From positions 15,810,001-15,874,000 of the forward strand of contig OZ260667.1 of assembly GCA_965285935.1 (NCBI GenBank): DNA of 64,000 nt. The letters are read 5' to 3'. Both the position numbers and the translations under genes were made by a program. Under the pieces are notes generated by a model. That model saw nothing but the letters and a program-made list of their open reading frames with translations, was not told where the DNA came from and ran no database searches. This DNA comes from Ophelia neglecta (lineage: Eukaryota). Positions 4,871 to 44,200 of the stretch are shown here, in pieces; the stretch's first letter is position 1; the number at the start of each line of letters is the position of its first letter.

Positions 4871-7800
4871 ATGGCAGAACAGCAGGAAAGCAGTGGAGAA
4901 GGGGTGTCTCTGATGTCTAGCGAGATGAAGAAGGGTGAGGGGCAGAAGCCCGATTGGGGCAGATTTGGACTGAGTTCTGAACAGCGGCAAGAAGAGGAGC
5001 AAAAATATCAACAGCAACATGCCGATGAGGTTGGAGAAGATTATGAGCACCATGGAAGTGGTGAAAAAAATGAATTATTTACTGAAGACCAGGTGAGTGC
5101 CTGAACATGGCCAGTTTGTAGCCATGTACAATGTACATATAGGACCCTCCTACCATATTGTTCTCGTCTATCAAGGTTTCAACCTTATATCAGAAAGCTG
5201 CAAATCAATATCGTCTTGTGTAATAGGTGTATAGGGTACTGTCCTGCCTTTAGGCTCCATAGTTAGAGGATAATGACATCAGAAGACTAAAGTTTTCCTT
5301 GCCATATGTTCAAGTCTAGTTGCCGGTTGTATGTATATATGTTGAACTTTTCACGAGAAGCATCAGTTATTAAAGCTCTGTCCAGATGTCTGATATTGAT
5401 GAATACTGTTATATCTGGACACTTTGAACAGCTTTATATTGTAGAGATGATGTATTTAAGTTACCATTATTATTATTATGACAGAAGTCACTTGAAATTA
5501 TTTTAAGCTTAGTAAGATGTAATTTGCTTACTATATCAAGCCTGTAAATTGCACATGTGTTTATTCCGAGAAAACTGTGTTGATACTTTTAACAATGCTT
5601 CAGCATAGTACACAAGGTCAGAATCCAAATAGTAATATTGTATTTCTGTCTGTAGACATTCAACTCATTGAATATTGTCACAAAATTTATCAGCCTGTCT
5701 ATATAAGCCTATGAGACTAATCAGCGGACATTGTGCTTGGCATGACATCCCATGTAGAATCTTGATAAATAATTAATATGTGGTAGACGGGTGTACACAA
5801 TTTAGCATTCAAATTTGTAGGAATACTTCAATAATCGGCACTCTGACTAACTCTAATATTATAGGCAAAGTATCATTGACATATAAGTCCTAATAGATAT
5901 GTGATTTTATGTTTGTTGCAGTCATCTAGAAGTAAGCCATGGTACAAGGCTAATTTCTTTATATCCGAGCCAGTGCTGTTTGGGACGTGGGACGGGGTGT
6001 TTACATCTTGTATGATCAACATATTTGGTGTTGTCATTTTCCTCAGGACTGGATGGATGGTGGTGAGCCATTATTAAAACTATATTACCTAATTAGGAGA
6101 GAAAAAATGCATATTTATCCTTTTTCACATTATGGCCTATTATTACTGTGTCAGTTAATAAACATGTACTGTAAACAATTATGAGTGTATTATACCTTTA
6201 TGCACAATATTTATGTTGCATACGGTTGTTGACAATTTTTAATTTTGGTATTGTCTATCCCTGTTGTCAGTTGTTTCAGATTTGAGATGTTATTTATCTT
6301 TTTACAATGCATAATTAACTTCTATATTTTCTCTTTGTCTACTAGGGAAATGCTGGCATTGGCCTCTCAGTCCTCATTATATTTCTAACATTATGTGTGG
6401 CACTGGTCGCAGCTTTGAGTGCCATTGGGGCGGTGGAAAGATGCCGCATGCAGAGTGGTGGCACTTACTTTTTACTATCACATATACTTGGCTCTAGGAT
6501 TGGTGCCTGCATCGGAATCCTCTACTGCTTTGGTCAAGTAAGATTAATATAGATAACTTTATTATAGTTCAAATCCACAGCCTTCTTTCTCGTTCATATA
6601 TATATCTTCTTTTACAAGCTTGAACTTAAAGTTTATTCCATGATACACAACTATTTCCAGGGTGTTGCTTGTTCTCTGTACTCAGTGGGGTTTGGGGAGT
6701 CAATTTCTGGCTTGTTTAATTCAGACAACATATGGATCTCCAAAGGCATAGCCATCGGCGTTTTGCTTCTCATTCTGAGTAAGTTCTTTGAATTTACTGT
6801 GTGTTATAAAAGACTGTAAACAATTATGTGAACTGCCATTTCACTCAATGCAAATATTACGGAGCCTGCCCAAGGCATGCTGGTGTAGTGACTAGGTAGC
6901 TCTGAGATGTAGAAAACGTGAGGCTGTGATAAAAAGTTCTGTTTGTTTTGATTTTAGAAGCAATAAACTGATACTTATGTAAACAATGATGAAGCAGATT
7001 TCTTGTCACAGTTTTCCTCAGTCACAATACACATATCACATTGTTTTTAAGACTGTCTTCAAATATATTATGCTGCTTGTTTGCTATGATATTCTTTATT
7101 CTCACATTATGGCAACATCAACTTGAATTAGCTGGGAGACAGCCATATTATAAACTTATAACAATGTGTTATTACCTGTATTTACCTGTGTCTGTGATGT
7201 CATACCTGCTTATTGATTTAATGTATAACAACAATCTCATCGAATGAGAACCCAATGAAAACAACCAAGGATTTATAGGATGTGTTAATTATATTGTTAC
7301 TCATGGTGCTTATTCATGTCTATTTACAGTTATCAATGTAGCTGGTGTGAAATGGGTGATCCGTTTACAGCTCGTACTTCTTATGGTTCTTTTTGTGGCC
7401 GTATTAGATTTTATGGTGGGATCATTCATTCATACGGAACCAGGTAAAAAAATTCTTTTTTACCTAATTGTGCCACTTTTCCTCAACTTTTCTAAAAAAA
7501 ATTTGTGACAACATGATTATATATTTGACAGAACATTATTCTATACCAATGACACATATCAGTTTATAATTACAGACTTTTTGTGAGAAAATGATTTTGA
7601 AGTGAAGAAAGAAGTTATGATGTATATGTGTAGATTACAGTATTTGAGGGTAGCAATTAGAAATGTTTTATTGAATTTTAGATTATGGGTTCTATGGATA
7701 CAGTAAGGTAATACTTCAGAACAACACTGGCCCCTACTACCTTCCTGGGGAGTCATTTTTCACTGTATTCGGTGTGTTCTTTCCCACCGCCACTGGAGTG

Positions 7801-10800
7801 TTTGCTGGTATCAACATGAGTGGTGATCTAAGAAATCCTGCAAGAAATATCCCAGTGGGAACACTGTCAGCTGTGGGTGTCAGGTAAGAGCACATAATCT
7901 AACAAACTATATAAAATAGGTTACTTTTGTTTTGTAAATACAGTCTATAAAATAAGTCTTTTTTTCTGATGGCTGTCTGAAATTTATCTCTGTGGCACTA
8001 TGCACGTGCCTGGCAAGTCAAGCCTTTGCTTTGGCGGCAATGCCTTGTTCCCTGTACAGTTCTGCATTTATCCCACATGCTTAAGCAACCCCCCCCCCCC
8101 TTCCCCTCTCCAATAAGCAAGGTTTTGATTTTCACATGTTTAGTATTGTTTTCAGTGCTACCTTATACCTGATCTTTGCTCTGATCTTGGGCTCTACGTG
8201 TGCCAGGAATGACCTTCAAACAAACTATTTAATGGCTGAAAAGGTACACATCTTTGTAATTAAATACCAATTAATTAATCTAAAACCATAACAATCAAAT
8301 GAATTTAAATGCTGCCTACTTAAAAGATACACAATAAAGTCATGATCTTTATCAAGTATTTTGTACTGCTGTTTGACACTACATATGAAACAGATGTTTG
8401 TAGATCCTGGTATGTTTTTACATTGATTGAGGCATGTACAAATGCATTTAGTATTCCTATCGCTTCTCATGTTAAATGTGTACAATGTGTATTTACATTG
8501 TTTGTGGACTGTACACTCTCCTATATTTCTGTAGTATCTCTGTCTTGATTCTGACATGTATACTGTATTGTCCCCTGACAGGTGTCCTATGTGGGAGGCT
8601 TATTTCTGGCTGGACTGTATATTTCCTCAGTATCCAGTTGTATGGGTGGTCTCTATGGATCTCCTAGAATATTACAGTCAATTGCCAATGAAAACGTCAT
8701 TCCTGTGATCAAAGTCTTGGGACAAGGGGTGGGTACACTCATTACCCTAACTGAGGCTGCTACTAATAGCCAGAATATAGTTGTACATGTAGTGAATTAT
8801 GTTAGTTTTTCCAATGTATGTTAATTAATGTAGTTGTGGACTCTAATACATGTAATTAGAATGTAAGGAGATAATGATTAAATAAATAATTAAATAGATA
8901 GTTTTTAAATGATGAAGGCCTCATTGTGTATGTTCATATTTTCATTTCAGCGAGGTCCAAACAAGGTTCCAGTTTTGGCTCTGGTAGTGGTCACTCTGAT
9001 CTCTCTCATTTTCATCTTTATTGGTCAAGTGAATACCCTGGGCCCCATAGTCACCATGCCTTTCATGTTGACTTATGCTGCTGTAGATTATGCCTACTTT
9101 GCTCTGGCAATGAGTTACGATGTTAAATCCAAAAGGGAGGAGAGATATCAGGTACTGTCAGGACATTGGAAATGGAACTATACCATTAAAAGATATATGT
9201 ACTTAACCAGAGTATTATTACTTTTTTATGCGTATATAAAGCAACTGTATCCATATGATTAATTATGCAAGATACTCGTAAGCAAACTGTATATCAATAT
9301 AATTAAATATACAAGGTACATATAGACATCAAAGATATATTTGTGTACTTTAAATAAGCATGTACTTTCATCTGTTTTACAGTCATCACCTGAGATTGAC
9401 CAAAAGACTAGCACCAATGGCTCTGTGGTACAAAGAGGGGGCGAAGGGGCTGGCTATGGGGCCATAGGCAAAAAGAGCAATGATCTAGACAAGCTATTTC
9501 CAGAGAGAAACCAGCACCGTGAGCCAGCTGGTCATGGAGGAGGCCAGCTAGACAGCCCCACCTTCTATGCTGATGGGGTTAAAGACATGGCTTCAGAGAC
9601 CACCAGCATGGCCAGTGAGGTGGACGATACAGCTGGCCTCTTAAAAAAAAGTAAACACTTGTATTACCTTTTTTGATCCTAGTTCTGAAATCCTATTAAA
9701 TGTACAAGTAGGAATCTACATGCACAAACTCAATGGCACCAAATATTAATGGTTATGAGGCCAAATCACAAACCACCAAATACCATGGTATCAACAGTAC
9801 TCTGTGACATGCCTACTCCATACAAATTGTGAAGAATGTTGAGGTTACAAGCCAGTTGATGTATATTATTCCAGCTGAAGTGCCAAAGCCCAATTTAGCC
9901 AATGCAGAAATTCATAGACAACCTAGGTCCTTCTATTCCATATTCTGTAATAGGTGGTTATCTCTTTTTGGGGTGAGTGAAGAATATTATTTACTTTCAG
10001 TTACTTAAAGAATGCTGAGTTGCTCAAACTAAGTAATGACCCTTGTCATTTAAAAATTTTATGCATATTTATAAGACAAAATTATTACAAATCTAAAATT
10101 ATTCTGTTATTGCTTAGATTATGAGAAATCCAAAACTGTTTTTTCTCAAGAAGCTGAGAGGAAAACTGAAAGTAGAGCATGATCACTAGATGATTCATAT
10201 TTCTCTGATATTTACAAGCATGTATCATGTTTATCAGGTGCATGACATCCAAAATATAATATTTCTGTCAAGTTACATAATCTGTGTATTTAAAATGTGC
10301 TTTGTTCAAATTGTTTTCAGTCAGTGGCAAGTCTAGTCATAATGTTTGGTATACAGTGGGCGTATGCATTGGCAAACATCTCTGTGGCCATTGTGGTATA
10401 CATCTACATAGGTCAGGCCAACCCTGGAGTATTTCCAGGTAAACTTAGAAAGCATATTCTTTTGTATATTTTTCGACCGTACATATTATTGTGTGACTAT
10501 CACTATGTTCTAAATATATATCCATAAGAGTGATAAGGATGAGCTATTTTAATCCTGACATGAGTGTGTGTTTGTCTAGGTATTGCTGAATTCAGCCTGT
10601 GGACATGGATCAGAGATGGCTTTAGAAGTTGTTGTCGGTAAGTTTATTTAATACTTTTCTTGGTATATCAATTGTCTTGTTGTAGAGGTGTGCACTAATT
10701 GTGACAAATGATCAAAATCGAATGGCCTTTGACAATATTTTATTTCATGTTTTTTGTTTGTTTGATATTACAATTTGTTTTAACTTCCTTCCTAGCCGAG

Positions 10801-14923: not shown

Positions 14924-17086
14924 CTAACTCATATGAAGTGGCTTAACATGATTTTGTGCATTTATAATAACATTTTTGTCAACATTTACTGCTTTCCCCA
15001 ATTTTTTCTTGCTCTCTTTCTTTTTCATATACCGGCTAATTCTTTTCACAGCTATGTTTATCATGAGACTCAGCCAGTAGAGCTGGAAGGCCAGCAACCC
15101 CACACATCCAATAACACACTTTTTTGGTATGGTTAATGGCACCATCCAAACAGGGACATCAGTGTAATTTCCATGTATATAAAACATGTAGGGAAAGACT
15201 AGCACCCTACACACCGTCCACATCAGAATGAGAACTACTCCGTTGACAACATACAGCAGAGTCTCCTCCTTTTTCAACTGAAAAGTAAAGCAAGATTTTC
15301 AGAAGTGCATCAAGCAGTAAAATATGTGTTTAAACCAGGCACAAACATGTGGTATCTAAATATTAATGTGGTAATCAAAGTTATGACTAAGCCTACCCCT
15401 GAAACCAGAACATTTATTTTCCTCTTAAACATTCCCTTTTATTTTCAAATTATTAAATATATACATGTATAATAAGAATAAAACATTATCCTTAAACATA
15501 AATCATATAGGTTAAAGGTGAGTGGAAGCTGCATGACTGGTGTAAAAAACAGTTTGATATCAACACATGATTCATAAATCACTCTACCCAATGTACATTT
15601 CCATCATAAAAAATGGCTGCCCTGCAATTTTCAACAATAATGAATACTGATGCATCCTTGTTCATAATCGTACTGGTCAGGTCTTCATTTTAAGCTTATA
15701 GTTACTATAGTTCAATAATACCTGCACTAGTATGGAGCGAAGTGATATAAATGGCACTGCAAGTTCTATAAGGTAGAAACAGCCAATGTAAAAGTCACCT
15801 GCACCCTGTCGCCAATACTGAAAAATAACTAATGTTGAGGTAAAGGACTGCTTTTTCTCATTTCCCTACACATGCAACATGTACATATGTATATAATAAA
15901 TTGATACTATTTAAATAAGTGACAAATTTAAAGAATAACTTGTTGGTACATTATTGGGAAATAAATACTGCATCCTTTGCCCATGAAATTAAGTTTCCTA
16001 TGTAAAATACTATAAATTAATTTGAATTCTTTTTGACAGTGTACTGTATATTAAAGTTAATATGCTTTTAGTTTCACCTACCATTATAATAGGAAAGTAT
16101 ATGATTGGAAACAGTAGGTGATGGGCCATCATCAGTGGCTGATATTTGACAAAACTGATGACAGCCTGACTAGCTGGAAGATTCTGCACTTGGGGAGTTT
16201 TATGCCAGTAGGTAAGGTACATGGCCCAGGTGTCATAGTAAAAATAAGGCACACCGAAACATGTATATACATCAGTCAACCAATGTCTGAAAGTAACAGG
16301 GAATTGTAAAAATAAGGCACTCTGAAACACGCATATACATCAGGGCATAACAGAAATTAGGAGACAGGCACCATAACTGGTATTTGACAAAAGGTATCTT
16401 AAATTAGTTCTGTCTAAATGGATTTATTTACAAAGCATATATCACAAAATCACAAATATCAAATTCATTACAAATTGGATGAATTCACATTAAATATAAC
16501 CACTTAACCTACCTGTCTTGAATTGGGTGGTTCTGGCAGTTTGTGACTATAATATATCCACTGACTGATGCTATAAATGCCTGTATTGCTGACACCACCC
16601 TATAATAAAGAAACAGAATCATTTACAATATGCCTATGTTCCTTTCTGCTGTATCTGAGAAAGGTACATAGGATGATTTTCTCACTTTTTTGAATGCTGC
16701 AGCCTGGCAGACTGTTCCTGAGGGGCTAAATATAAATAATAATAATTAAAAGTATAATTAAACTTCTTCCCTATAGCTCATACTATACTGCAATATGTCT
16801 TGCCTGATTACAAGCAAAATCGACTGTACTTATAACTATGTCCCAGCTACCGGATTGTCAGTAAGTAGTGAAGGGTCATATGTTAATGCATCTTTGAAAG
16901 TCACACAGTCATATATAGAAACAAAAAGTAGTAAGCATTTTAAGGGGGGCTGACTGAAGGGAATGTCATCATTAAGGTTGCTGTCACTATCTAATGCTGA
17001 GTAAAAGGTGGATTAATGACACAGGCTTGGGGTTAACAAGACTCTCTCTCTGTCTCCATCTGTCTGTCTGTCTGTCTGTCTGTCCA

Positions 17087-17150
<64 letters not shown>

Positions 17151-17494
17151 GCATCTCGTTTTTTTCTTCCGGTCAATATGCACTAGTTTTTTGAGCAGGT
17201 AATTTGGATATAAAGGTAAATAACCTCGTACGTCAGAATGATCCACACATGCCAGAATCCCGACAGGATGTACCCACACCCACATTACCATTTTTAGCCT
17301 GATCGATTGGCCTGAACGTAAACTGCAGAAGACATGAAGAAGGGCTACCTGAGACTGATGACATGGCGATCCGCGACCGACAAAGAGTTGACTTTCTTCT
17401 GTATTTCCAGGATAACGTGAAATAGTGTCGGGAAGAATATGCATCCTAGAATTGTCACAATTGACAGCTGCCAAAAAGAATAAATCAGCTCCAT
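14924..17494 (-). CDS. TLCD3: TLC (TRAM/LAG1/CLN8) domain membrane protein, TLCD3A/B (FAM57)-like, 5 exons, 295 aa
   Basis: Minus-strand exons 17494-17349, 16599-16513, 16286-16082, 15817-15722, 15277-14924; GT-AG, phases consistent, 888 nt. Motifs RVVSAIQAFIAS, RHWLTDVYTCFGVPYFYYDTWAMY, LMMAHH, GDFYIGCFYLIELAVPFISLRSILVQ and CRVLVFPYMFY follow the FAM57 pattern. Confidence 0.9.
17042..17147. repeat. Compound (CTGT)n/(CT)n microsatellite in TLCD3 intron 1
   Basis: Directly visible simple repeat. Confidence 0.95.
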
Positions 17495-17950
17495 GTAAAC
17501 AAATTGTGGTAGTAATGGTAGTTGACATACTAATCGTAGTAGTAACAAAACTAGGTAGTTTTGATGCCACATTTCCGGTCGTGATACAGGGCGCGAGATG
17601 GATCTCGGTATGGACATGAAGGATATCACTTTTGGGTAATGATTTTTTTGAGATTTACAGTCAAACTGTTGATTTTTAGCCAAATTGTTGAATTACAGCC
17701 AAACATAATATATATATGCGATGCCTAGTTTGCGAGCACAAGAGAAATCACCCCTTATATATGATAGGATATTTACAGGGGTTCAGCAAAACAATAGACG
17801 TGTGACTAGCAGACGTGAACATAGCCGAGGACGACTTCGGTAGACGAAGAGAGACAGTCGTGTACGGCTAACGTGAACAATGCAGACGACACCCAATCGT
17901 AACCTCGTTGTGGTCTGCACGTCCTTTAACCTCACAGCCCACTAAAATCA
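17495..17950 (-). promoter_or_regulatory. 5' UTR and CpG-rich promoter region of TLCD3
   Basis: CpG-dense stretch directly upstream of the ATG at 17494; ETS-like ACCGGAAAT on the minus strand near 17571-17579. Confidence 0.5.
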
Positions 17951-20283: not shown

Positions 20284-23200
20284 CTATTGATGGCCTGCAT
20301 CAAAGTGGTTATCATGATGAACCTTGGCCATGTGATCTGCAAACCTGTAAACAAAAAAATAAAATAAATAGATATGCCACCAGGAGGTAGATTTTACTTT
20401 AATGACTGCTTTCAACAGATATAAAAATCACATCAAAATATCTCAAAATAAGTGCTTCTTCCCTTTCTAGCCTGGGACTGCACTGTCACTGCAGACCTTT
20501 GACATATTTTTGTGTGTGCTTAAGGACTTTGATGCCCATATTTCTATAACTAATGTAATATAGATAGATAGCACAGTCTTGACACTGAAAATATACAGCT
20601 TCAAGTTTCCCAGGACTAAATGCAACATGAAAAATGGCTACTAGTGGCCGCAAGAGATTTTGAGATAAAATATAGATGAAACAGTGGATGTGAGGAAAAA
20701 CTCCTATACATGGTGGGAGACAAACTCTAACTTATTAAAAGACTTTTATGCATGAAAACCTAGTTCTCAGTACAATGTCATACCTTTGGTGGCATTCGGA
20801 AGCAAGGTCCCGCTTGCACTCTGAGGTGTATGCCAGCTTATAGAGGACAAGGAACACCAGCACATGGAGTATAATAGTGTAGAAAAACACCACAGTCCTT
20901 GCTGCTCGATTTCCCATTATAAAACGACCCTGGAGAACATGGAAATAAAGAAGGTATTCATTAGATTGAAGTCAGTTATTACTGTCTGTATGTATAGTAA
21001 AAGTAAAAGAAGTGCACATGATTAAAAAATACACACCATATACATTCAAATAATAAATAAAAACATAAACATTCATATCATATTTAATAAATAAGTGAAA
21101 AAGTAAGTGCACCAGGCACAAGTTAAACATTCATTAAACTAAAACTTGCAAATCTCAAATCATGACTAAATATGGAAACATAAATTTAGAGGCAAATAAG
21201 ATATGCAATCTATGCTATGAAAATTTACATCAAATCTGTGCACCTTACAAATCTTACTCTTTCACCCACATATTATTTTCATTAATGCAGTCTCCGCAAC
21301 AGATATTTTAGGGGAAAATTAGTTAATTAAAACAAATAATGATAATAATTAATAGTTACAACAAAACCAAAAAAAAACATTCCATATAAATATATATATA
21401 AATTTTGCAAAATAAATAAATAAATATAATGATTGATATTAATCACTGATTAATAGTAATGACAATAAAAAAATTATATATATGAACAGATCACAAGGTG
21501 CAAGGCAGATAAGTTTCATTGCAGTCAAGTGAAAAATATTCTATGTATATTGACATTTGAGATAAAAGGAAACTGTATTTATAACAATGCTTTATTTCTT
21601 ATGTGTATTTGCCAACTGCCAACAATAGCTGTGGTGCACTTTACAATTGTACATGTTCATACCTGATAATACAACACCACACCATTTTGTTCATCTCCCT
21701 CACATCTGCCATGCCTTAAACTGTTAGTATGCATATCATGTGTTCTGTGCTAGGTCAATGTTTACCTTTCTGCTTTTTTCACAAGTAAAATGAGTCTGAA
21801 TAAATTATTGGATTTATCAACAACTTTGTGCAAACTTGTTTTCTGTATTAGTTCTTACTAAATATAAATACATTGCCAGTAGGCCTCATGGTATTCCAGA
21901 GGAAGATAATCTCCCAATGTGTAAATTATTTTGACAAATAAACATGTCTGTGCTTTACACCTGCAATACCACTATACTTAGAAGGTCATTGGTATTGGTC
22001 TTGACTCCTGTAGTTAGAAGACACTGAAGCATTTTTAAGATTGTTCCTTTTTTATCGTTGTCAGACACAATGAAACAGCCTCATCCAGGGCAGGGCAGAG
22101 AACTTCACCTTCGTGGGCCTAAAGACATCAAACTAGATGAGGTATCATCGGGAGCTTGGATCCTAGTCTTTTTCACCCTACCCATAGCAATGGCCTTACT
22201 TTGGAGAGTAGTTGTACCGCTGGTGTTTTGGACCACCCCCGCAGACATGTACACCGAGATCAAATTCTCCCTATCAGGTACTAGCTACTCTCATATAATC
22301 TGTTTTCTTAAGAGTTTTATAAAGTAGCACTGTCAATGAAAAATACTGTATAATTTCATGTAATAATATAGACATGTCGAAAGGGAGGCATGCTTTGGAA
22401 AGTTTAAATAAAGTTAGTGTTCTTTTTGTTTTTTCAGACATATATGAACACTTGGCTAATCCGTGCCCAGTGCTTATATCAGCAAAAGAGAGAAATTCAA
22501 TTGAGACGGACAGTCTTGATGGAATGGTTCTATCAAGACAACAATTCATGTCCAAACAATCTGAAATAACCCAAACTTTCGGCCTTGTGAAAGTGTCAAA
22601 AGCAATAGGTAATTTTTTCCATTGGGATACAGTCATGAAGATTTTCTTGGGGTTGTTTTATTTAAATATTTATGGCTTAAAAAATGAAAGATTGATACCT
22701 ACAAAATCACCAGGTAGATTAATGTACATTTATATCTATAAAGCCAGCATGGGATTTTAATGTAATTTTATCTTCATTAATTTACAATTTCCTTTCAGCA
22801 AATATGAAAACTACTAGGAAAAATAGGGACTCCAACTTGCAGAAGTTTTTGGAATTATCTGGAAATTCTACTTATTATGAAAGTTGGGTTGGTAACAGGC
22901 CAACAATCAAGATAAGTGATTTACTAGTAAATCGGAGGTCAGATGCATCCAACACAAACATTAAATTTGAAAAATGTTTAGCTGGCTATCTACACCAGAT
23001 AGACAAAACAGTCCTAGAAGTTTTATCTTTGAAACTATCTTCCCTGACTGTAAACAACATGTTTAAAAGAGGAATCATATTAAGTGAATATGCATCAACT
23101 CCTGTTCAGGCCACTCAAGTTACTTCTACAGGAACTTTTCTTCAAATAATGGGAGTAACTGATGTGTACTTAAAGGAGAAACGGAATAACAACCAGGACA

Positions 23201-26200
23201 GCCGTCAACTGATACCATGGACAAAATACAAACTCTCACCAGGTGAATCTTTAGAATTCATTAAACGCATATACATATTAAGTTTTTTCTTATTATAAAG
23301 AAACAAAGAATACTTCTATATAAGACATCTAGTTCTATAGATTACACATTACTGAATGATTTTACATGTAATTGCTTCCTGTTAGTGTCTTAGCACATTG
23401 ATATGGACCACTGGCCGTCAGTGCTCCAGGATCAAGGCATGGCTATACATGGCTACTAGTCAGGAGCCAAACTTACCTCTTGATTTTTATCTTCTAAGTA
23501 GGCACAAAAACCATGCCTTTAAAGATTATCATACATACACATAATGAAAAATAAATCTTTTACCATGCAGGAGATGTTTTGATTTCGTACCCAGGACTTC
23601 AGTTTTGGATGGGAACTCAGTCTACAATATCAGTGTTATTAATAGGTGAACACTCTACAGACACTGATGAGAAGCATTTACCTGGGGAGATATGATAGAG
23701 CTCTACTAGTGACTTGGTGTTTACACACAATCCTTACCATACTAAGTGTGATCTTGTCATAGGCAGTGAGGTTCATATATTTTCTCTGTTTTTCTTTCCT
23801 GTTAAATGAAGAGAATGGATCCAGTCGCTCCTCGTACTGAGAGGAATAACGACTCTCTGCATCCTCAGCATGAGATGTACCCTGGCAGAAAGAGATACAA
23901 ACACCCATGAATGTTCCCACACATTACACAAATGACTACATAGGAAGGTGAATGCTATAGTTATTTACAAAGATAAGTTTATATAGTTTGAATTATTGCC
24001 AATTTTAAAAGAATTGTTGAATTGTGCTTGACAATTTGAGTCTGCCTACATAATCTTATGATGAACTCTTAAAGGACATACCTTAGTTGGATAACTCTGA
24101 AGGAACTTGATTTTCTCATAAAGTTTGACATTGTCTGACCTCAGTTTGTCTATTTCATTTTGTAAAACGATCTGAGTTTGTTGTTGGGCAACATTTTGCT
24201 GTAAAATAGTCATGGTAGCTGAATAATCAATTAAAGAAAGGAATATTACGGTAATCTTATTAATTATCTTTGCCTGAAATGACCTTAATTCAACCAATTA
24301 TGGGCCTCATGTGCCACCAATTTTTTTATTATAATAAACCACATAGAAAATCTATTTTTTTAGCCTGAAGCTTGACCACATCAAGTATACCCACTGCTTC
24401 CAACTCCTGAGCTCTCACTCTAAATCTTTCTCTCTGACTCTGCACTATTGGTAACAAGGAGTCTGCAGCAGATTTCAGTTTTTCATCCGAAGGACTCATT
24501 ACAGCTGAAAGTAAGACACCATTTCACAATACATGTCCTTTTCAAATTTTATTTTATTAAGCATTTGGTTTAATTTAGTTTTTCTACAGACAGCTTAAAT
24601 CAAATGCTAACCTGATGTGTTGGACATGCCTTTAACAGCATCAGCCACAAGCTCTGCACTCTGAGAGGGAGGTCCAGCTTCTCCCTGATTAAAATCTTAA
24701 GAATATTAACACATTCAACAAACAGACAATCTTTAGAAGGTATATAGGTTATCTTCATGTCTGATTATTAGTCTAGTTCCCTGAATAGGTTTTTTTTTTG
24801 TGTACTGCTATTCACCTTGTGGTTAGTAATTGAGTTTGCAAAATTTACCGACTGCTTGTCTATGACAGAGTGTTATCCTAGGCAATGCAAAGCAGTTTTT
24901 CTGTAGATTTCTCTTAAATGAATGTCCTACCTCAGCATCACCTCTGAACAAGGAGGAGAGAGCGTTGACACTACGCAGATCATCTTCCAGCTGGGTGATC
25001 AGGCTCTTCTGCTCTTGGATAGTAGAGAAAGCCTCGTTATAATGCTCTTGTAGAGTGGACAATTGACCTGCAAAATATAACCAAGTTTCTTAAACATAAC
25101 AAACATATTATATCACCATTTGCAGGAAAATTTGATATGCATGTAAACTTACAGAAAAAGGCTGACAAATAATTGCTTAGGTATTATGGTTGATTGGCAC
25201 CATATTTACAGCTATATTAATACCTGTAGAGAAATGAAATGAGCCAATATCCATGTGTGGGTTCACATCATAACTACTAGTATTACTGTCGGCATCCTTA
25301 TTTCGGACTCCATTGGTAGGGCATACTGATCTTTTTATTATCTAGCCATACTACTATCTTCCTTTTCTAATTGAGATATAATACGCAGAATGTTTTAAAG
25401 TGCAAGATGGTTTAGTAGATATGGACTTGCACAAGATATGAAGTAGTTTTCTATGCTTCTATGCTTTCTATGCTCATTTTTTTGCAACGGATTTCTAGGA
25501 ATGTCTTGTAATAACATTATGAAAGTTCAGGAAAGACCACCAGACTAGTCGCAGGCTTAAGGCAATGGGGCAGTTACTCTAACTTCAATTTTGGTATGCT
25601 TCAACTAGTCTCATTGATAAAAGTACACAAGAAAGTCACAAGGCTTGTTAATGAGAATTGATCCTTGACTTATAATGATACATACAGGGGTATGTAACAG
25701 GAAAAATCACTTAGTCTACTAATACATAGAAGGTTGATTGAAGACTCTTTGCCAAGGACTAGGAAGCAAATTTCTTTTAAACTTTGAACCAGAACACCTG
25801 AGTTTATACTGAAGAAAAGTATATCAGGGGATGTATTTGGGGTAATTGTTTTTTTGAGCCCTATAGTTTTGACTTGCATAATGCAATGATATTGGATCAA
25901 AGTCAGTTCCTGAAAAAGTACACACCAATCTATCAGTCAGAATCACCATCTCTCAAAGACGGTTAGACCTATTCTTATGGTTTTGCCTTTTAGCACTAGG
26001 TTACAAATCATGGATCAAATGGCAGTTTTCTTCAGGGCATAACTTAAAGGACAATTTAAATAATATTAATAATTTTTTTTTAATGTCCTTGCTCCAAAAA
26101 TAGATTAAATAATATAATATTTCCTATGTAAGCCAGAACTCTCTATCTGGAAATTAACATATGACATTGGACAATGTATTTTTTTGTAATCTTCTAGACA

Positions 26201-29200: not shown

Positions 29201-32200
29201 TCTATACCCATAATGATGTCTTAGTCTAATTTTTCAACAGCAGTTTACGAGGCAATCACATAAGAATTACAAGAGGGCCACTTCGTGGCTTGTGCACCCA
29301 TGGAACAAATGGAGTTCACATGGTATCCAACAGCAAGTTTTGTGGCAACATACACCAATACGTACAAAAATAACTTTGAAAGATACAATTCCATCTCATT
29401 TCTGATATAATTAGTATAATTCTCATTGAGAACCTAACAAAATAGTACTTTCGTTTTGTCCACATATTTCTAACTAGCCTACAGATCTACTCATTAATAT
29501 CAGTTGGCTGCCTTTGAATGAAACTCCTGACCCCTTTAATCTGCAATGAACCTGCCAAATATTGAACACAGAAGACAAGTTCACCACACATGTTAGGGAG
29601 AACAGCTGTTTGAGTTAAGTTTACAGAATGAAATTGCTGTTCTACCCATTTACACCCTTTTTTTTAATGATAAGTCTAACTCTTGCCCAGTAAAGACAGA
29701 TTACATACGTCTTCTGCTGGAGGCAGAGAATTGTGAGCATGGGTGATCTCCTACCTTGAGCGGAGAGTACTGTTTCATGCTAGTGTGGTCCATGGTATAC
29801 CCATACAGTCTGACAACACGCACATACTGGTACAGGCACTTGAATGTCAAAACACCATCGTAAGTTGAAGCACAAATCTACAAGTCCTCCTACAAATCAG
29901 CAAGTACGCAGTACAGAATCCAATAAAAGATAACAACATTTGTGACCCATTGCAGCTGAGTAGCTTGGAGCACTCGTCAGTTTTCAAATGTTTTACTAGA
30001 GTCACGAGATAATACTTGGTTTTAGCAGCTTAATACTGCGCCTCACTTTCCTTTGATAATAATGCTTGTTATGTTAGTTTGATTGTCTACATCAATCACT
30101 CAGATCAAAACTCCCATTCCTCCCCCTCTTCCTGAGTGGAAATACTTTTCTCCAGCTTTTCAATATTTTCCTTTCTGTCCACCTCATCCTCCCAGTCCAT
30201 CTCTGACTGAACTACCGCCTGTGTGAGTTTCTCTATGGCCACCTTGCGTTTTTCTTCCATGGGGCTAGTCGTGCCATTGGCCATTGGCTCCTCGGGCGTG
30301 GGTGTAGGGCTCGTGTCATTGGGCGGCATCTGATGGCCGTCACTGCCCTTGTCTTCCTGTGTGTTGTCTTCCTGTGAGTTGTCTTCCTGCGTGTTTTCAG
30401 GGGTGTCAGCAGCCGTGTCCAGCTCAGCCCCCTCGTACACACGACATGGCTTGGCACGTTTCCGGCGGCTGGCCCTGCTCTGATCAGGCCGCTCGTCCCT
30501 CTCCTTGTCCTTCTCCCCTTCATTCTCAGCCGCCTCGTTTGAGCTCTCCTCCTTAACCCCCATCTCCTTGGGTGTTAGGTTTCTTGCCGGAGCCCCTAGT
30601 GAACGCCGACCACTACAATCTACTGGCTCAAACATGGGAAACATGCACTGACTCATGCTGTTTTCTAGCCCAGAATGTGAGTTTTTGCCAGCGTCGCTGG
30701 ACTCTGACATGCTGTGACAGTCACTGTGGTTAGACAGATCATCGGGCTCGTACTTGACTGGGAAGTGATTGGGAGTGGTCTGTTGGGAGTTAGGGGTGGA
30801 GGCGTTACTGAGTGGACCCCCTCCAGGCGAGCTCACGTGCTGCTGTTTGGCTCTCATACGGTGGTTGTGGAACCAGTTGACAACAGTCTTGATGCCGACT
30901 CCTAGATCAGCAGCAAGGCCCTCGATTTTACTCTGGTTGGGGTAAGGATCCTGGGCGTAGGCCACTCTCAACGAATCCTTCTGCTCCTCTGAGAAAAACA
31001 CTCTCGCCTTCTTCTGAGACATATGTCCATCAAGGGATGAACGCTCATCGGTGCTGCTTTTCCTCTTTCGAACTGCAAAGGTAAATCAAAATAATGTAAT
31101 GGTGCCATTTTAATTAATGTAAAACATATTTTACAATCTACTCACTCATAGAACTATTGTACATATCAAAGAAAGACACCAAATATGATCAGAGTGCAAT
31201 GTATAAAATTGTTGATATTATGGTTCATTATTTTTTCATAACATTATTAGTTAGTACTAAATTCTAATTCATCCCAGCATTAAATTGCTACTTTGGTATA
31301 TTTAAATAGGAAGCGTGAGTGAATTACAAGCAAATCCACAACTGATTCCATGCTACATGCAGTATATTAAATTGTTCTGTAAATGCACAACAACCAACTT
31401 TCAAACTCAAACAAGTAAACAGCACCACCACCACCTAGCCACCCTCCGCTTGTTTGGTGGTTCCTTAATTCTGTCAAGCAAAATATCAAGCAAATATGAA
31501 GGCAGCACAGACTCAGCACAAAACAGGAAGAGGAGTTTGCTCAGTGCAGCATAAAAACAACAAGCAGTAAAGAGAATGCATGGGATAGATGTCAGGGTAT
31601 TTTTCATCAAGCATTGAGAGTGGTACGTCAAAGCTCAGGCACAGACTTCAAACACATACATCATACGTAGAGGATGATGACTAGGATTGTGGTTACCTTT
31701 CATCTCATTTTGGTATATCCTCAATCTTTCAACATTGAGCGGGTCTGTGAGCCACATCTGCATTTTAATGAAGGGCTCTCTGCCTTTGAGGCTGAGCATG
31801 TGCCAGGGTTTCGGTTTGGAGAGGAGCTCGCTGACCGAGCCCTGAGAGAGGCCCAGTACTGCTTCCCCAAACAGTTTCTGTCCTAGGTTGTTGAACTGGA
31901 GCACCTCTTTGACTTTGGCTGTGATGGCCAGGGTATCTAGCTCCTGGGACATGGCGGCTATTTCAAACACAGAGTGCTGCAGGGGGGGCATGGGGAAGTC
32001 AACGTGATAGGGGAGGGCTGGCATGGCCTGGGGGGTGTAGACACCTGGAGTGGGGGTGGGGGAGGGTGGCACCGAGGTGACCCTGCAGGAGGTGGGTAGG
32101 GAGGGGCTAGGAATGCTAGAGCCATTGGGGTTGGAATACCCTCCCCCCTGGCCATGCATTAAGTGGTGGTGGTTGGTGGGGGTGGTGTCTGTGGGTGGTG

Positions 32201-35200
32201 ATCCTGGAAAATCAACCAATAAAAAAACTTAGAAAGACTAAATAGATTCTTAACTGAAACATGGATAATATTCTAGGTATGGTATCTAAAATATGCATAA
32301 TTCCCCCAAAGAAAACAAGAAATTATGTCTGGGTGTCAAAGATTTGAATTATTGATCAGTTTTTAACTAATTTGGTTAGAGTTTGGCAAGTTGTATGCAA
32401 AGATGGTTCAGTGTTAAGCACCGATCAACAGTGCATACAACTCGGTTTGTATTAGTCATATCATTGACTATATTTTACCTGGGAAACTCTTAGCAAAATC
32501 ATCAGACTTTGTGTTTTGGCTTTGTTTTGATTTCCTTGGGGGTACTGAATCAAAAAGAAAACACACCATTTAAATAATCTATCTTGTATCTTACTCTATG
32601 AGACTAGCATGGTCTAACATGTTGTGTTATCAATACCATAACACAGACTAAGGTCCTCTACACTAACAGGAATAAGTTGGTTGTGAATTAAAACAACATT
32701 TTTGTAAAACTAATGACTACAATTCCCTTTAAAAATATCAATTATATGTTGAGCTTCTATTATATGTGTTAAATCATAATGCTTCACACTTACTAGGCAT
32801 GCCCTCGAAGTTCTGACTTCGCAGGAACTTGTCAGGGGGGATACGGTACTGACTGGCCACCAGTTTAGGAATGGCCTCCGGGTCCTCTAAAAATATCTGC
32901 ATGCGTATGAAGGGCTCACGGCCTTTCTGGGTTAGCATGTGCCAGGGTTTAGGCCTGGCCAGCAGATCACTGACTGAACCCTGGGACAGGCCCAGAACAT
33001 TCTCCCCGAACAGCCGCTGGGAGATGGAGAACTGGCTGAGATTGTCCTTCACCTTCTTCACCAGATCGTCGGTGTTGATGTTTGAGTATTTGTCAAACTC
33101 CTCCTGGGTGATAGGAGGCAGTACAGCTCTCAGCGGACGCTGAGGATGAACCGGAGACTGGTTCTTGGTCATCAGTGAGTTGGCGATGCTCTGCATGCGC
33201 TGTAGAGGCGACATTCCTTCGGAGGGACCTACGTGATACTGATTGTATTCCGCTGGCTGAGAGTTAGAGCGAGGCCTTACCAAGAAGAAGGCGCTGCCGG
33301 CGTGTCTGAGGACATCAGGGGTGGCTGCAGCACTGGGGCTGAGGTCCTGGGGCAGGGCCTGAGAGGTGGGGGTGCTGTGTCCTGATGACGTATGCTCCCG
33401 GTGCCTCTCCCTCTCCCCTGGCTCAGTCTTCACCTTCAGGTTAAGTGCCTCCTCCTGGTTCTCTTTGTTAGCGTCTGTGTTGTGGTTGAGATTGTTGTTT
33501 TCCTTGTCTCTCATGACTTGCTGGCTGTTGCCGTCTTCATGCCCCTTGTATTTGCCCTGTGCCTGCTGGGCTAGGCGTGACAGTTCCTGTCTGTACATGG
33601 TGGACTCGGCCAGATTGCCACTCTGTTCTGCCGCCTGTGCTAGTTTGGCCAGCTCCTCTCGGTAGATGCGAGCAACAATCTCCTGAGAGAGGTTACTGCC
33701 GTCCGTCTGTACCTTACGTCCTCGGTTGTTCTCCTCACTGAGGCTGTCACCGCTGTGCGACTTCTCTCTCTTCCCACTGTGGGCTGGCTGGCTGTGGTTG
33801 GCCATCTTGGCAAGTTCCTGTTGATATATGCTGGCAACAATTGCATTGGCAGCCTGGCTCTGCAAGTAGAATAGGGTAAAAATGTCAACTGAAGAATATT
33901 AAGCATATTTGTTTGAGTGGTTCTTTGAATGTTGCTACAATAAAACAAGCTTAGTTTCAAGTCTTAACACACCTTTTCTTGAGTCTGTTTGGCCTGCATT
34001 GCTTGAGAAGCTTCGTTGAGTATTTGTGCAATGCGCTCCTCAGTTTGAGAATCTTCCTGCCTATATGTAGACATCATAGGCTGGTTGCCTAGAATTGACA
34101 TAATTAAAGTTTTATAGTTAATAAGCAAGAAGGTACCATTAGAGTGAAACATGTCTTAATCTAAAAAACTGAAGATTTCACAAATGACTATGTTATTTAG
34201 TCAACATAAGTTAATATGTAGATGATTCAATGTTTCTCACCCTTTTTAGGAGCGATTGCCTTGAGTGTTTGTATATTTTGTTCATCACAGGCCCAGGCAT
34301 ACATCTTGCGATAAGACTCTCGACCCTTCTCAGTCAGCTTGTCCCAGTGTTTGGGTTTGGAAAGCAGTTCGCTCACGGTGCCCTGCGACAGCCCGAGCAC
34401 ATGTTTGGCAAAGAGCCGCTGGCCTATGTTATGTGTACTAAGGATGTCTCTGATGCGCTGCGACACCATGGCCGTGTCCAGGGTCATGGAGTTGATACTC
34501 TCAGAGCGGGCTATGTTCTGTATACGTTGGAGGTGCTGGTGGGCATCAGGTGACTCAGGGGAGGAGGAGCGCCGTCCATTCTGATGGGCAGGAGGAGGAG
34601 TGCTGGGGGAACCTCCAGGGTGTGAGGAGGGAAGAATTGGCAGGGGAGGGGGTGGACCGAGGGGTATGCCATTAGGCACGCAGCCCTGAGCCATCTCCTT
34701 CTCGTACCTCTCCCTCTCACGCTCCAGGTGGGCCAGCTGCAGCTGGTTGTGAAGGTGATATGATGCTACTATCTCCTGGCCAATCATTGAAGCAAACGCA
34801 TCCGTGTTCGCGAGAGGATGACGAGGGGTGCTTTCGACTGAGCTGGGGGATGAGCCTGCAAGGAAGAAAGGTGTAGAAATGCACCAATCAAATCCTATTT
34901 TCTACAACTGACACTTTAAAGGATTGGTTCTTCTGAAGGTTCATAAAATTATCCAAACAAAATGTTTATTGATCACAACATCACAAAAGACGGGCAGGGT
35001 AGTCATTTTTAGAGTATGATTGAACTAATATCTATCACTGGCATTTGTACACCTTCCTTCCCCCACCCCTACACACTGGTATTCCGACTAACTGTTGTTA
35101 GTCGGAATAGACACAGATGGTAAAACATTCATATACAGTTGTGGCAAATGACTTGACTAGAGAAAGGCACTAAGAAATAAAATAGGAGGTGATGTGAACT

Positions 35201-41200: not shown

Positions 41201-44200
41201 GAAATATGATAACACTCAATTACATTTTTGCAGAACCCATCTGATATTGGCAGAACTAGTAGTGAGTTAACATACACATCTTGTACCACGAAACTTCCGT
41301 TAGGAATGAGTTACAAGTTCAACACCAAAATACCTGGTGTGGAATTCCATACCTGATCTTTATATTCTAGCTATTTGAAACCCCTTCTTGTTCTAACTAA
41401 TCACATATCAGCTATTACTCTATAATAGCCGTTATAATCTGCCTTGGACCCTACCTGACACCTATGGTCATTTCAATAAGATGCCCAGTCAAGTCACTGC
41501 CACACTTCTCTGGCTGGTATTAAAACCCAGTTCAAAGTCCAAAAAGCTAGTCTATCCTTCAAGTACTCATTATATAATAACTACAATTGTTATGCAGAGA
41601 TTATTAAAGAAAAATAAAGACTAGACTGAGTACTTCAGACAGAACTCCATACAGGGGATTAACATTACCAGTACCTCCAATATTAGCTGGGAGGCTGAGC
41701 CGCCATTCTTGATATGCCCTTTGAATTGTGTTTAGAAATCCATTTCACCCCTGAATGTTAAGTGTGTACAGAACTTCATCTCACCCCTGAATGTTAAAAT
41801 GTATATGGAACTCCATCTCACCCCTTAATGTTAAAATGTGTACAGAATTCTATCTCTTCCCTGAATGTTGAAATGTGTACAAAACTCTATTACACCTCGG
41901 AATGTTAAAATGTATATGGAACTCCATCACCCCCCTTAATGTTAAAATGTATACAGAATGCCTTCTCACCCCTGACCCTGAATGTTGAATGTGACAGAAC
42001 TCTATCTCCCCCCTTAATGTTAAAATAAACACAGAACTCTATCTCATCCCTGAATATTGAAATGTATATGGAACTCCATCTCACCCTTTAAGCCTCAAAC
42101 CTGTGAGGATGCCATCGCACCCCTGAACAGAATGTTAAAAGGTGTACAGAACTCCATCTCACGTCTGAATGTTAAAATATGTATATAATGCCATCCAACC
42201 CCTAACCCTGAGTCTTAAAATGTGTCCAGATCTCCAACTCACCCCTGAATGTGAACTCATCTACTTGTTATCATCAAATATACGTCTGTTAGGCAGGCCT
42301 ACATTAAAGACTTTTTTTGCACCTTGAATTTTCAGCCTACATATAATAAAACTATTAAATAGAATGTAGCAAGTATACCACATTCTGAGCTCTGAGCTGT
42401 CATGTTAACAAGATTACAGATACCACATTCTGAGCTCTGAGCTGTCATGTTAACAAGAATACAGATACCACATTCTGAGCTCTGAGCTGTCATGTTAACT
42501 AGATTACAGATACCACATTCTGAGCTCTGAGCTGTCATGTTAACAAGATTACAGATACCACATTCTGAGCTCTGAGCTGTCATGTTAACAAGAATACAGA
42601 TACAGAATACAGATACCACATTCTGAGCACTGATATATCATGTTTACTAGATTACAGATACCACATTCTGAGCTCTGAGCTGTCATGTTAACAAGATTAC
42701 AGATACCATATTCTGAGCTCTGAGCTGTCATGTTAACAAGATTACAGGTACCACATTCTAAGCTCTGAGCTGTCATGTTAACAAGATTACAGATACCACA
42801 TTCTGAGCTCTGAGCTGTCATGTTAACAAGATTACAGATACCATATTCTGAGCTCTGAGCTGTCATGTTAACAAGATTACAGGTACCACATTCTAAGCTC
42901 TGAGCTGTCATGTTAACTAGATTACAGATACCACATTCTGAGCTCTGAGCTGTCATGTTAACAAGAATACAGATACAGAATACAGATACCACATTCTGAG
43001 CACTGATATATCATGTTTACTAGATTACAGATACCACATTCTGAGCACTGATATATCATGTTTACTAGATTACAGATACCACATTCTGAGCTCTGATATA
43101 TCATGTTTACTAGATTACAGATACCACACCCAGAGCTTGAGCTAAATCCTATAAAGCCAATACAAAGCTACAGTTATGTGAAGTACCGTATCCGACCGGG
43201 TTAGCGCCCAGGGCGTTAAAATTGGCCGAAACGCAAAATTGGGGGGTGGGCGCTAACCCAGACATGGGCGTTTAGGGAGCCAAAAACCTTCGGCAGGTGG
43301 GCGATAATAGGTGAATTTCGCATAAAATGTAGTATAGGTTGTTCCATGCTCGTATATTCCTTATATAAATATGCACTACTACTGTACACATTGCGCCACC
43401 TATCGGAGTGATGTCATAGAATGGTGTCGTGTGCATGGTTTCAACTTGAGTAATACGTCACTGCTTCTGCCATAAATTGTGATGAAACGCACAAGTTAAA
43501 ATCACGGAGACCACCTGTTCCATTTGATGAACGAAGTAAACAAGATTTATTGCAGATTGTCAAGCTGTTATGGATTAGGAGTGGAGGTTATTATGATGGA
43601 CCCTCATTATCAAAATTTGCTGCCAGAGTTGCGAGTTAGTGAATACTGGTTTTGTCAATTTGTGCACTCAATTAGTAACATGGAACTCGTAGTCTCGTAC
43701 TTGATGAAAAATATGAGGGGATAATCAAAGCTCAGATCACAATCTGGGACTGGTTGGGGGTGGGCGTTTAAGCTAGTTCTGCCCAAAATGGGGGGTGGGC
43801 GTTTACACGAACATGGGCGCTAACCCGGTCGGGTACGGTAGTTGATTTGTTGGCATGGGTCACATATCAATATACATGTATATCATAGTTTTTACTTCTA
43901 AATGGTGGCATGAGTATAGGAATGAGATTATAGCCCATAAGAAATATACTCTAAGCAGGACCAATCTTTTCACATATAACCACTTCAATGTGTGTGGACT
44001 CTGAGCAGGACTCATCCCATCACAGATAACCACTTCAATGTGTGTGGAGTCTGAGCAGGACTCATCCCATCACAGATAACCACTTCAATGTGTGTGGACT
44101 CTGAGCAGGACTCATCCCTTCACAGATAACCACTTCAATGTGTGTGGACTCTGAGCAGGACTCATCCCATCACAGATAACCACTTCAATGTGTGTGGACT

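What the first reader, a model, noticed from the sequence alone, without database searches (positions are those of the whole stretch)
22065..23695. Hidden 4-exon gene nested antisense in a CASP-only intron: membrane-anchored, apparently catalytically dead JmjC/cupin protein
Seen in sequence: three separate ORF-track fragments plus an unlisted last exon splice via three phase-1 GT-AG introns into one 315-aa frame. The frame lies wholly inside the 2.8-kb intron (20930-23737), while neighbouring CASP introns are only about 0.1-0.45 kb. Established knowledge: JmjC 2-oxoglutarate oxygenases run tpxHxD ... fxQixGxKxwxL ... LxPGDxLxxPxGwwHxV ... svsv. Inference: this protein has the same series in order (STPVQAT ... 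[12 protein letters not shown] ... [17 protein letters not shown] ... TISVLL), but Q, T and F sit where the HxD...H iron ligands belong, so it would be a pseudoenzyme. One hydrophobic segment (about aa 29-54) suggests a signal-anchored secretory-pathway protein, loosely like JMJD8. I do not recognise it as a named gene, and the host isoform is itself a Golgi protein.
Basis: partly seen in the sequence, partly recalled or inferred. Interest (0 to 1): 0.9.

Follow-up and report, generated by a model that had tools for sequence, protein, structure and literature searches.

The report
Hidden gene inside a CASP intron
A real, apparently unannotated four-exon gene for a fast-evolving 315-residue membrane-anchored protein lies on the opposite strand inside one intron of an invertebrate-type CUX/CASP gene and is conserved in a second species, but its proposed identity as a dead JmjC/cupin enzyme could not be shown.

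Summary
Exons 22070-22277, 22438-22608, 22799-23242 and 23571-23695 on the + strand join through three GT-AG, phase-1 introns into a 315-codon frame. The frame lies wholly inside the 2808-nt minus-strand CASP intron 20930-23737.

A contig from another species (L001) carries the same arrangement. It has exon 2 (part), exon 3 and exon 4 homologues, with splice sites at the same codon positions. Only that frame is open in both species, and the same CASP exons lie antisense just downstream. dN/dS is about 0.30 (p = 5e-11) with synonymous sites saturated, so this is a protein-coding gene under purifying selection. It evolves about ten times faster than its host.

One strongly hydrophobic segment (aa 29-54) supports a signal anchor.

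The JmjC/cupin pseudoenzyme reading is not established:
- Pfam, PDB sequences and an exhaustive phmmer search of 1.84 billion representatives gave no relative except the L001 ORF.
- AlphaFold on exon 3 alone was unusable (pLDDT 33).

Verdict: a real nested, lineage-restricted gene of unknown fold. Moderate interest.

The parts
22070..22277 (+). Coding exon 1 (69 codons plus the first base of a split codon). ATG at 22070. A strong acceptor-like site ends at 22064, so the exon may begin at 22065 behind an unseen 5' exon.
   Evidence: An in-frame stop at 22025-22027 upstream makes 22070 the first ATG of the contiguous frame. Conservation of this exon in another species could not be tested: L001 starts inside exon 2, and one search found nothing.
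22154..22231 (+). Codons 29-54: the single hydrophobic segment, a putative signal anchor / transmembrane helix with one internal Arg.
   Evidence: Kyte-Doolittle 19-residue window peaks at 2.34 (aa 31-49). The maxima in exons 2-4 are -0.03, 0.95 and 0.82.
22438..22608 (+). Coding exon 2 (171 nt, phase 1 to phase 1).
   Evidence: Its last 28 codons align with L001 1-96, and the donor falls after the same codon position.
22799..23242 (+). Coding exon 3 (444 nt, phase 1 to phase 1). It carries the conserved core of the protein.
   Evidence: 53% identical to P0001/L001 at E = 2e-32. Only this frame is open in both species. dN/dS is 0.27.
23571..23695 (+). Coding exon 4 (40 codons plus stop TGA at 23693-23695).
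   Evidence: The homologous exon is at L001 844-971, with its acceptor at the same codon position. The junction rebuilds the conserved P-G-D in both species.
20930..23737 (-). Host intron (2808 nt) of the CASP-specific 3' part of the CUX/CASP gene.
   Evidence: GT at 23737-23736 and AG at 20931-20930 on the minus strand. The sequence is unique within the window and has no terminal repeats.
23738..23887 (-). Upstream host exon (CASP_C profile positions 172-216), 42 nt from the nested gene's stop codon.
   Evidence: Pfam CASP_C E = 1e-11. The orthologous exon in L001 ends 20 nt from that species' nested stop codon.
20735..20929 (-). Downstream host exon encoding the CASP transmembrane tail. The 3' limit is uncertain: there is a possible donor at 20784|20783, otherwise the frame stops at 20735-20737.
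   Evidence: Pfam CASP_C positions 221-250, E = 1e-6; sequence.

Best explanation
This is a genuine, lineage-restricted protein-coding gene with four coding exons and a 315-aa product. It sits on the opposite strand inside a CASP-specific intron of a non-vertebrate CUX/CASP locus. Its product is most likely a single-pass membrane protein of the secretory pathway. It would have a 28-residue, slightly basic N-terminal tail in the cytosol, a signal-anchor helix at aa 29-54, and about 260 residues on the lumenal or extracellular side (type II orientation). That domain has a poorly conserved first part. Its conserved core runs from roughly residue 57 of exon 3 to residue 26 of exon 4, interrupted by a variable 12-residue loop and followed by a variable tail. 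The core lacks His/Asp/Glu at the places where a 2-oxoglutarate oxygenase would bind iron, so I expect a binding or scaffolding role and not catalysis of that kind. Shown: the gene structure, the coding constraint, the conserved nesting and the hydrophobic segment. Inferred: the membrane topology, the compartment, the non-catalytic role, and any interplay with CASP expression.
For: The spliced frame and canonical splice sites are in the sequence. An orthologous arrangement is present in contig L001 from run ERR14113986, with exon 2 end, exon 3 and exon 4 on one strand and CASP exons on the other. Donors and acceptors fall at the same codon positions, and all length differences within exons are whole codons. 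Only the claimed frame is open in both species. Summed over the three comparable exons, pS is 0.62 against pN 0.31, dN/dS is about 0.30, and Fisher p = 5e-11. The neighbouring CASP exons in the same species pair give dS about 1.6 and dN 0.04, so the species are well separated and the frame has been held for a long time. There is no transposon signature and no paralogue in the window. Conservation is concentrated in a core block, about 70% identity over exon 3 residues 57-127 against about 30% over residues 1-56.
Against: There is no transcript evidence. No spliced full-length protein for this gene exists in the 15-billion-protein collection. Exon 1, and so the start codon and membrane anchor, could not be checked in a second species. 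Only two species are available. Topology rests on a small charge difference and on the segment's length and distance from the N-terminus. An acceptor-like site 5 nt upstream of the ATG, in the same phase as the other introns, leaves room for an unseen upstream exon.
Confidence: 0.8

Rival explanations
1. One reading: the C-terminal domain is a double-stranded beta-helix of the JmjC/cupin type that has lost the HxD...H iron ligands and the 2-oxoglutarate-binding basic residue. That would make it a membrane-tethered lumenal pseudoenzyme, loosely like JMJD8. This refines the best explanation and does not contradict it.
For: The ordered motif series is really there and coincides with the blocks conserved between the two species: P-V-Q-x-T-Q-V, L-Q-I-x-G-V-T-D-V-Y-L-K, P-G-D-x-L, F-W-M and I-G-E. 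The one poorly conserved stretch inside the core (exon 3 residues 128-139) lies where JmjC domains carry a variable insert; this placement is from established knowledge of the fold. The low-confidence model puts strands exactly on those motifs, at 102-105, 113-116, 121-124 and 141-144. Q, T and F at the proposed ligand positions are identical in both species.
Against: No Pfam family, including JmjC, Cupin_8 and Cupin_4, matches any exon at E<=10. No PDB chain matches. No JmjC protein appears among 1.84 billion representatives at E<=0.001. hhalign against E. coli RoxA gives probability below 1%. The spacer between the second motif block and P-G-D is only about 20 residues, much shorter than in FIH-type JmjC proteins. 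The model is too poor (pLDDT 33) to count as support. All tests were per exon, so a weak signal across the exon 3/4 junction could have been missed.
Confidence: 0.35
2. The four exons are only the 3' part of a longer plus-strand gene. One or more upstream exons, coding or 5' UTR, would join at the acceptor-like site ending at 22064, so the true product and its N-terminus differ from the 315-aa model and the gene may not be fully nested.
For: A pyrimidine-rich tract plus AG ends at 22064, 5 nt before the ATG, with no stop between 22065 and 22070. The join would be phase 1 like all the other introns.
Against: The ATG at 22070 has a good context and is followed by a typical short tail plus signal-anchor layout. 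No upstream exon could be identified, and L001 does not reach this region.
Confidence: 0.2
3. It is not a functioning protein gene. It would be a conserved antisense non-coding transcript or regulatory element of CUX/CASP, a decaying pseudogene, or a transposon relic whose open frame is accidental.
For: There is no expression data. There are no relatives beyond one species, and no known domain.
Against: Synonymous change greatly exceeds non-synonymous change. Both species have intact frames with whole-codon indels only, and the splice sites are conserved. Strand and frame specificity of the open frame is clear. There are no repeats or extra copies. The minus-strand frames are closed, so these are not alternative CASP exons.
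Confidence: 0.05

Closest known systems
JMJD8 (JmjC-domain-only protein of the ER lumen)
   Same: Similar size. JMJD8 has an N-terminal hydrophobic signal that stays uncleaved and may tether the protein, with the rest of the protein in the lumen of the secretory pathway (PMC5684140). The protein here has an N-terminal hydrophobic segment followed by a roughly 260-residue domain with a JmjC-like motif order.
   Different: JMJD8 is recognised as a JmjC protein by sequence, whereas this protein matches no JmjC/cupin profile and no JMJD8 relative. The hydrophobic segment here starts at residue 29 and is 26 residues long, so it looks like a signal anchor and not a signal peptide. No relationship is shown.
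FIH-type JmjC hydroxylases / Pfam Cupin_8 and JmjC families
   Same: These motifs coincide with the blocks conserved between species.
   Different: There is no significant profile or sequence match. The proposed iron-ligand positions hold Q, T and F. The spacer before P-G-D is much shorter. The fold is untested.
Catalytically inactive JmjC proteins such as JARID2 (own knowledge, not tested here)
   Same: If the cupin reading is right, this would be another JmjC-like domain kept under selection without its metal ligands.
   Different: Those proteins are nuclear chromatin factors that are clearly homologous to active enzymes. This one is membrane-anchored and has no detectable homology.
Host/nested gene pairs in animal genomes (for example the mammalian survey PMC11694760, listed)
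   Same: A complete coding sequence lies inside one intron of a host gene on the opposite strand, and that intron is much longer than its neighbours.
   Different: Here the nesting is conserved across species with saturated synonymous divergence. The nested stop codon sits only 20-42 nt from a host exon, so the 3' UTR probably overlaps host coding exons.
Taxonomically restricted (orphan) genes
   Same: No detectable relative outside a narrow group despite an exhaustive search. Protein evolution is fast, with dN 0.40 against 0.04 for the host.
   Different: It has a multi-exon structure with conserved intron positions and clear purifying selection, so it is not a very young de novo ORF.

Membership tests
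JmjC / Cupin_8 2-oxoglutarate oxygenase superfamily | Significant sequence or profile match to the family models | tested here: not met
   hmmscan of each exon against Pfam-A found no family at E<=10. phmmer/hmmsearch against PDB sequences found nothing relevant. phmmer against 1.84 billion representatives returned only the orthologue. hhalign against E. coli RoxA gave probability below 1%. Caveat: exons were tested separately, and the joined protein was not searched.
JmjC / Cupin_8 2-oxoglutarate oxygenase superfamily | Double-stranded beta-helix fold | tested here: inconclusive
   AlphaFold2 on exon 3 with a two-row alignment gave mean pLDDT 33.4 and pTM 0.26, too poor for a fold search. Exon 3 also lacks the last strands, which exon 4 encodes.
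JmjC / Cupin_8 2-oxoglutarate oxygenase superfamily | HxD/E...H iron-binding triad | tested here: not met
   At the positions the motif alignment proposes, the residues are Q, T and F in the window and the same in L001/P0001. The only invariant His in exon 3 (residue 65) lies outside the proposed strands. This depends on the unproven motif alignment.
JmjC / Cupin_8 2-oxoglutarate oxygenase superfamily | Basic residue (Lys/Arg) binding the 2-oxoglutarate C5 carboxylate on the strand after the Q-I-x-G motif | tested here: inconclusive
   The equivalent stretch reads G-V-T-D in both species, with no Lys or Arg until the end of the strand. Equivalence of positions cannot be fixed without a structure.
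Nested antisense intronic gene | Whole coding sequence inside one host intron on the opposite strand | tested here: met
   The CDS at 22070-23695 (+) lies inside the host intron 20930-23737 (-). The host exons are identified by Pfam CASP_C. The same layout is seen in L001.
Nested antisense intronic gene | Independent transcript with its own promoter and poly(A) site | not testable with these tools
   No RNA data are available. There is no AATAAA or ATTAAA on the + strand between 23695 and 24230, so the transcript probably extends beyond the intron.
Single-pass type II (signal-anchor) membrane protein | One hydrophobic segment long enough to span a bilayer, not at the extreme N-terminus | tested here: met
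   The Kyte-Doolittle 19-residue mean peaks at 2.34 at aa 31-49. The segment covers aa 29-54, and no other segment exceeds 1.0.
Single-pass type II (signal-anchor) membrane protein | N-in/C-out orientation and conservation of the anchor | tested here: inconclusive
   The N-terminal tail has net charge about +1 and the C-terminal flank about -2, read, which only weakly favours N-in. No exon 1 orthologue was found.

The most novel reading that the evidence does not exclude
The gene encodes a new, ligand-less cupin/JmjC-like module anchored in the Golgi/ER membrane. It would have been kept for a long time inside the CASP-specific part of the CUX/CASP locus because its transcript, which must run antisense across CASP-only exons, tunes the CUX-versus-CASP isoform choice, or because the protein works together with the Golgi protein CASP.
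Probability: 0.1. Interest if true: 0.65.

Novelty: new member of a known kind. Interest (0 to 1): 0.4.

Why it matters
The result adds a conserved, selected protein-coding gene that no protein in a 15-billion-sequence collection represents, apart from a raw ORF call on one contig. Automatic annotation of this lineage has therefore probably missed it. It explains why one CASP intron is about ten times longer than its neighbours. It is also a clean example of a nested antisense gene whose position next to a host exon is conserved, which makes sense/antisense interplay at an alternatively spliced locus (CUX against CASP) testable. If the fold proves to be a metal-free cupin in the secretory pathway, it would be a new pseudoenzyme family. 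Otherwise it is one more taxonomically restricted membrane protein.

Tried and rejected
- **Pfam:** all four exons gave nothing.
- **PDB sequences:** exon 3 alone and the exon 3 profile gave only chance-level hits.
- **Word-indexed homologue searches:** exon 3, exon 1 and the two-species profile found only P0001.
- **Exhaustive phmmer:** exon 3 found only P0001.
- **JGI metagenome contigs:** 51 pattern matches, none confirmed.
- **AlphaFold2 on exon 3:** pLDDT 33, so I ran no fold search on it.
- **hhalign against E. coli RoxA,** fetched by reference as a natural JmjC-type protein: no similarity. This is a weak test, because RoxA is distant from the FIH-like group and each profile has few sequences.
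- **Rfam on the whole window:** nothing.
- **Transposon or repeat origin:** rejected.
- **Alternative minus-strand CASP exons:** rejected, because the minus frames are closed.
- **Organism:** not identified, since no tool output names it. I take neither the window nor L001 for human. The whole CUX/CASP locus is compact with short introns. By my own recollection of those sequences, the homeodomain is much closer to the insect cut type than to vertebrate CUX1. L001 is an orthologue of the window's locus.
- **Joined protein:** searching and folding the joined four-exon protein was left out. All searches were done exon by exon, by reference.
Full report
**1. What is in the sequence**

On the + strand an ATG at 22070 opens a frame. 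The frame runs through four exons: 22070-22277, 22438-22608, 22799-23242 and 23571-23695.

- Each junction has a canonical GT donor and a pyrimidine-rich AG acceptor.
- Every intron interrupts a codon after its first base.
- The pieces add up to 948 nt, which is 315 codons plus TGA.
- The whole-codon parts of the exons translate without stops into 69, 56, 147 and 40 residues.
The fourth is a 38-aa ORF below the usual listing threshold.
- The window contains no N.

**2. The host gene**

The minus strand carries a CUX gene.

- Three CUT-domain exons and a homeodomain exon lie at 30105-34787.
- Exons further downstream hit Pfam CASP_C.
- The intron between CASP_C positions 216 and 221 runs from 23737 (GT) to 20930 (AG) and is 2808 nt long.
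- The neighbouring CASP-specific introns I could delimit are about 0.18-0.42 kb.

The coding sequence of the plus-strand gene lies wholly inside this one intron, and the intron belongs only to the CASP isoform.

I take neither the window nor L001 for human. The locus is compact, and by my own recollection of those sequences the homeodomain is of the invertebrate cut type. No tool named the organism.

**3. Is it a real gene?**

The exon 3 peptide found exactly one relative among 5.8 billion clustered proteins and among 1.84 billion representatives scanned exhaustively. That relative is P0001, a raw ORF call on a 1896-nt contig from sequencing run ERR14113986, at 53% identity and E = 2e-32.

The contig (L001) is genomic DNA of another species and repeats the whole arrangement:

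- The end of exon 2 is at 1-97, with its donor after the same codon position.
- Exon 3 is at 246-686. I chose this acceptor over an alternative in-phase one at 204 because of length and a better pyrimidine tract.
- Exon 4 is at 844-971.
- Three CASP exons lie on the opposite strand.
- The nearest CASP exon ends 20 nt from the nested stop codon, against 42 nt in the window.

Several lines of evidence show coding constraint:

- The exon 3/4 junction rebuilds a conserved P-G-D in both species.
- Intron lengths differ (190 against 148 nt and 328 against 157 nt), whereas indels inside exons are whole codons.
- In both species only the claimed frame of exon 3 is free of stops; the other five frames hold 7-15.
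- Nei-Gojobori counts summed over the three comparable exons give pS 0.62 and pN 0.31, so dN/dS is about 0.30 with Fisher p = 5e-11.
- The flanking CASP exons in the same species pair give dS about 1.6, dN 0.04 and dN/dS 0.02.

The two species are therefore far apart at silent sites. The nested frame has been kept by purifying selection, and its protein changes about ten times faster than CASP.

There is no sign of a transposon: no other copy in the window and no terminal repeats. Chance ORFs, a pseudogene, a non-coding conserved element and alternative minus-strand host exons are all poor explanations.

**4. What the protein looks like**

Exon 1 encodes a 28-residue, slightly basic tail, then a 26-residue hydrophobic stretch at aa 29-54. 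The Kyte-Doolittle 19-residue mean peaks at 2.34, and nothing else in the protein exceeds 1.0.

The length of the stretch and its distance from the N-terminus fit a signal anchor better than a cleaved signal peptide. The small charge difference across it favours N-in/C-out. This is inference, and exon 1 could not be checked in a second species.

Conservation between the two species is uneven:

| Region | Identity |
|---|---|
| Exon 3, first 56 residues | about 30% |
| Exon 3, residues 57-127 | about 70% |
| Exon 3, residues 128-139 (loop) | almost unconserved |
| Exon 3, last 8 residues, and exon 4, first 26 residues | conserved |
| C-terminal 14 residues | variable |

That pattern indicates one compact globular core with a variable loop and tail.

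**5. The JmjC/cupin claim**

None of the tests I could run supports it, and none excludes it.

- No exon matches any Pfam family at E<=10.
- No PDB chain is related by sequence or by the two-species profile.
- The exhaustive search found no JmjC or cupin protein.
- hhalign of the exon 3 and exon 4 alignments against E. coli RoxA, a natural JmjC-type oxygenase fetched by reference, gave probabilities below 1%.
- AlphaFold2 on exon 3 with the two-row alignment gave mean pLDDT 33. I did not send that model to a fold search.

In favour of the claim:

- The unconserved loop sits where JmjC domains have a variable insert.
- The poor model places beta strands on those motifs.

Against it, the spacer before P-G-D is short and there is no sequence signal at all.

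The residues at the proposed iron-ligand positions (Q, T, F) are identical in both species. If the alignment is right, the ligand-less state is old and stable.

The step that would settle the question is a search and fold of the joined 315-residue protein.

I put the cupin-type fold at roughly one in three.

**6. Gene ends**

A strong acceptor-like site ends at 22064, 5 nt before the ATG. It is in the same phase as the other introns, so an upstream exon (5' UTR or coding) is possible.

Downstream, there is no AATAAA or ATTAAA on the + strand between the stop codon and 24230. The stop codon hugs the host exon in both species. The 3' UTR therefore probably runs antisense across one or two CASP-only exons. 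That would allow transcriptional interference or RNA pairing with the CASP isoform specifically. This is inference only.

**7. Comparison with known things**

As a genomic arrangement this is an ordinary host/nested antisense pair, though a well conserved one.

As a protein it belongs to no family I can name. JMJD8 is an ER-lumenal JmjC-only protein whose N-terminal signal remains attached (PMC5684140). It is the nearest functional analogy, but no homology is shown.

The gene is best filed as a taxonomically restricted, fast-evolving membrane-protein gene.

**8. Verdict**

- The gene is real (confidence about 0.9) and probably unannotated.
- The membrane anchor is likely (about 0.7).
- The dead-JmjC interpretation is unproven (about 0.35).

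Interest is moderate. Nested genes and orphan genes are common, but this one is clean, conserved and placed so that its interplay with an alternatively spliced host can be tested.

Noticed in passing
window 22040-22069: A pyrimidine-rich tract plus AG ends at 22064, 5 nt upstream of the nested gene's ATG. It would be phase 1 like the other three introns, so there may be an undetected 5' exon.
   Followed up: partly
window 23696-24235 (+ strand): There is no AATAAA or ATTAAA between the nested stop codon and 24230. The stop lies 42 nt from a CASP exon (20 nt in L001), so the 3' UTR probably overlaps CASP-only exons in antisense.
   Followed up: partly
window 41734-44427: Three satellite-like tandem arrays lie inside a CUX intron: a 37-nt unit at 41734-42252, a 45-nt unit with 16.5 copies at 42375-43143, and a 50-nt unit with 94% matches at 43948-44427. 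The long minus-strand ORFs at 42332-42992 are only this repeat read through.
   Followed up: no
window 14924-16330 (- strand): A TLC-domain gene lies downstream of CASP. The ORF at 14924-15277 hits Pfam TRAM_LAG1_CLN8 (E = 5e-6), and the ORF at 16010-16330 looks like another exon of it.
   Followed up: partly
window 17042-17147: A (CT)n microsatellite of about 53 copies. It produces the Arg-Glu repeat seen in the ORF at 17013-17570.
   Followed up: no
window 4805-9676 (+ strand): Several plus-strand ORFs, including a hydrophobic one at 8909-9262, suggest a multi-pass membrane-protein gene upstream. That ORF gave no Pfam hit, so the gene is not identified.
   Followed up: partly
L001 204 versus 246: Two in-phase acceptor candidates exist for exon 3 in the second species. 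I used 246, which has the better tract and a length closer to the window's exon. The choice changes the exon by 14 codons.
   Followed up: partly
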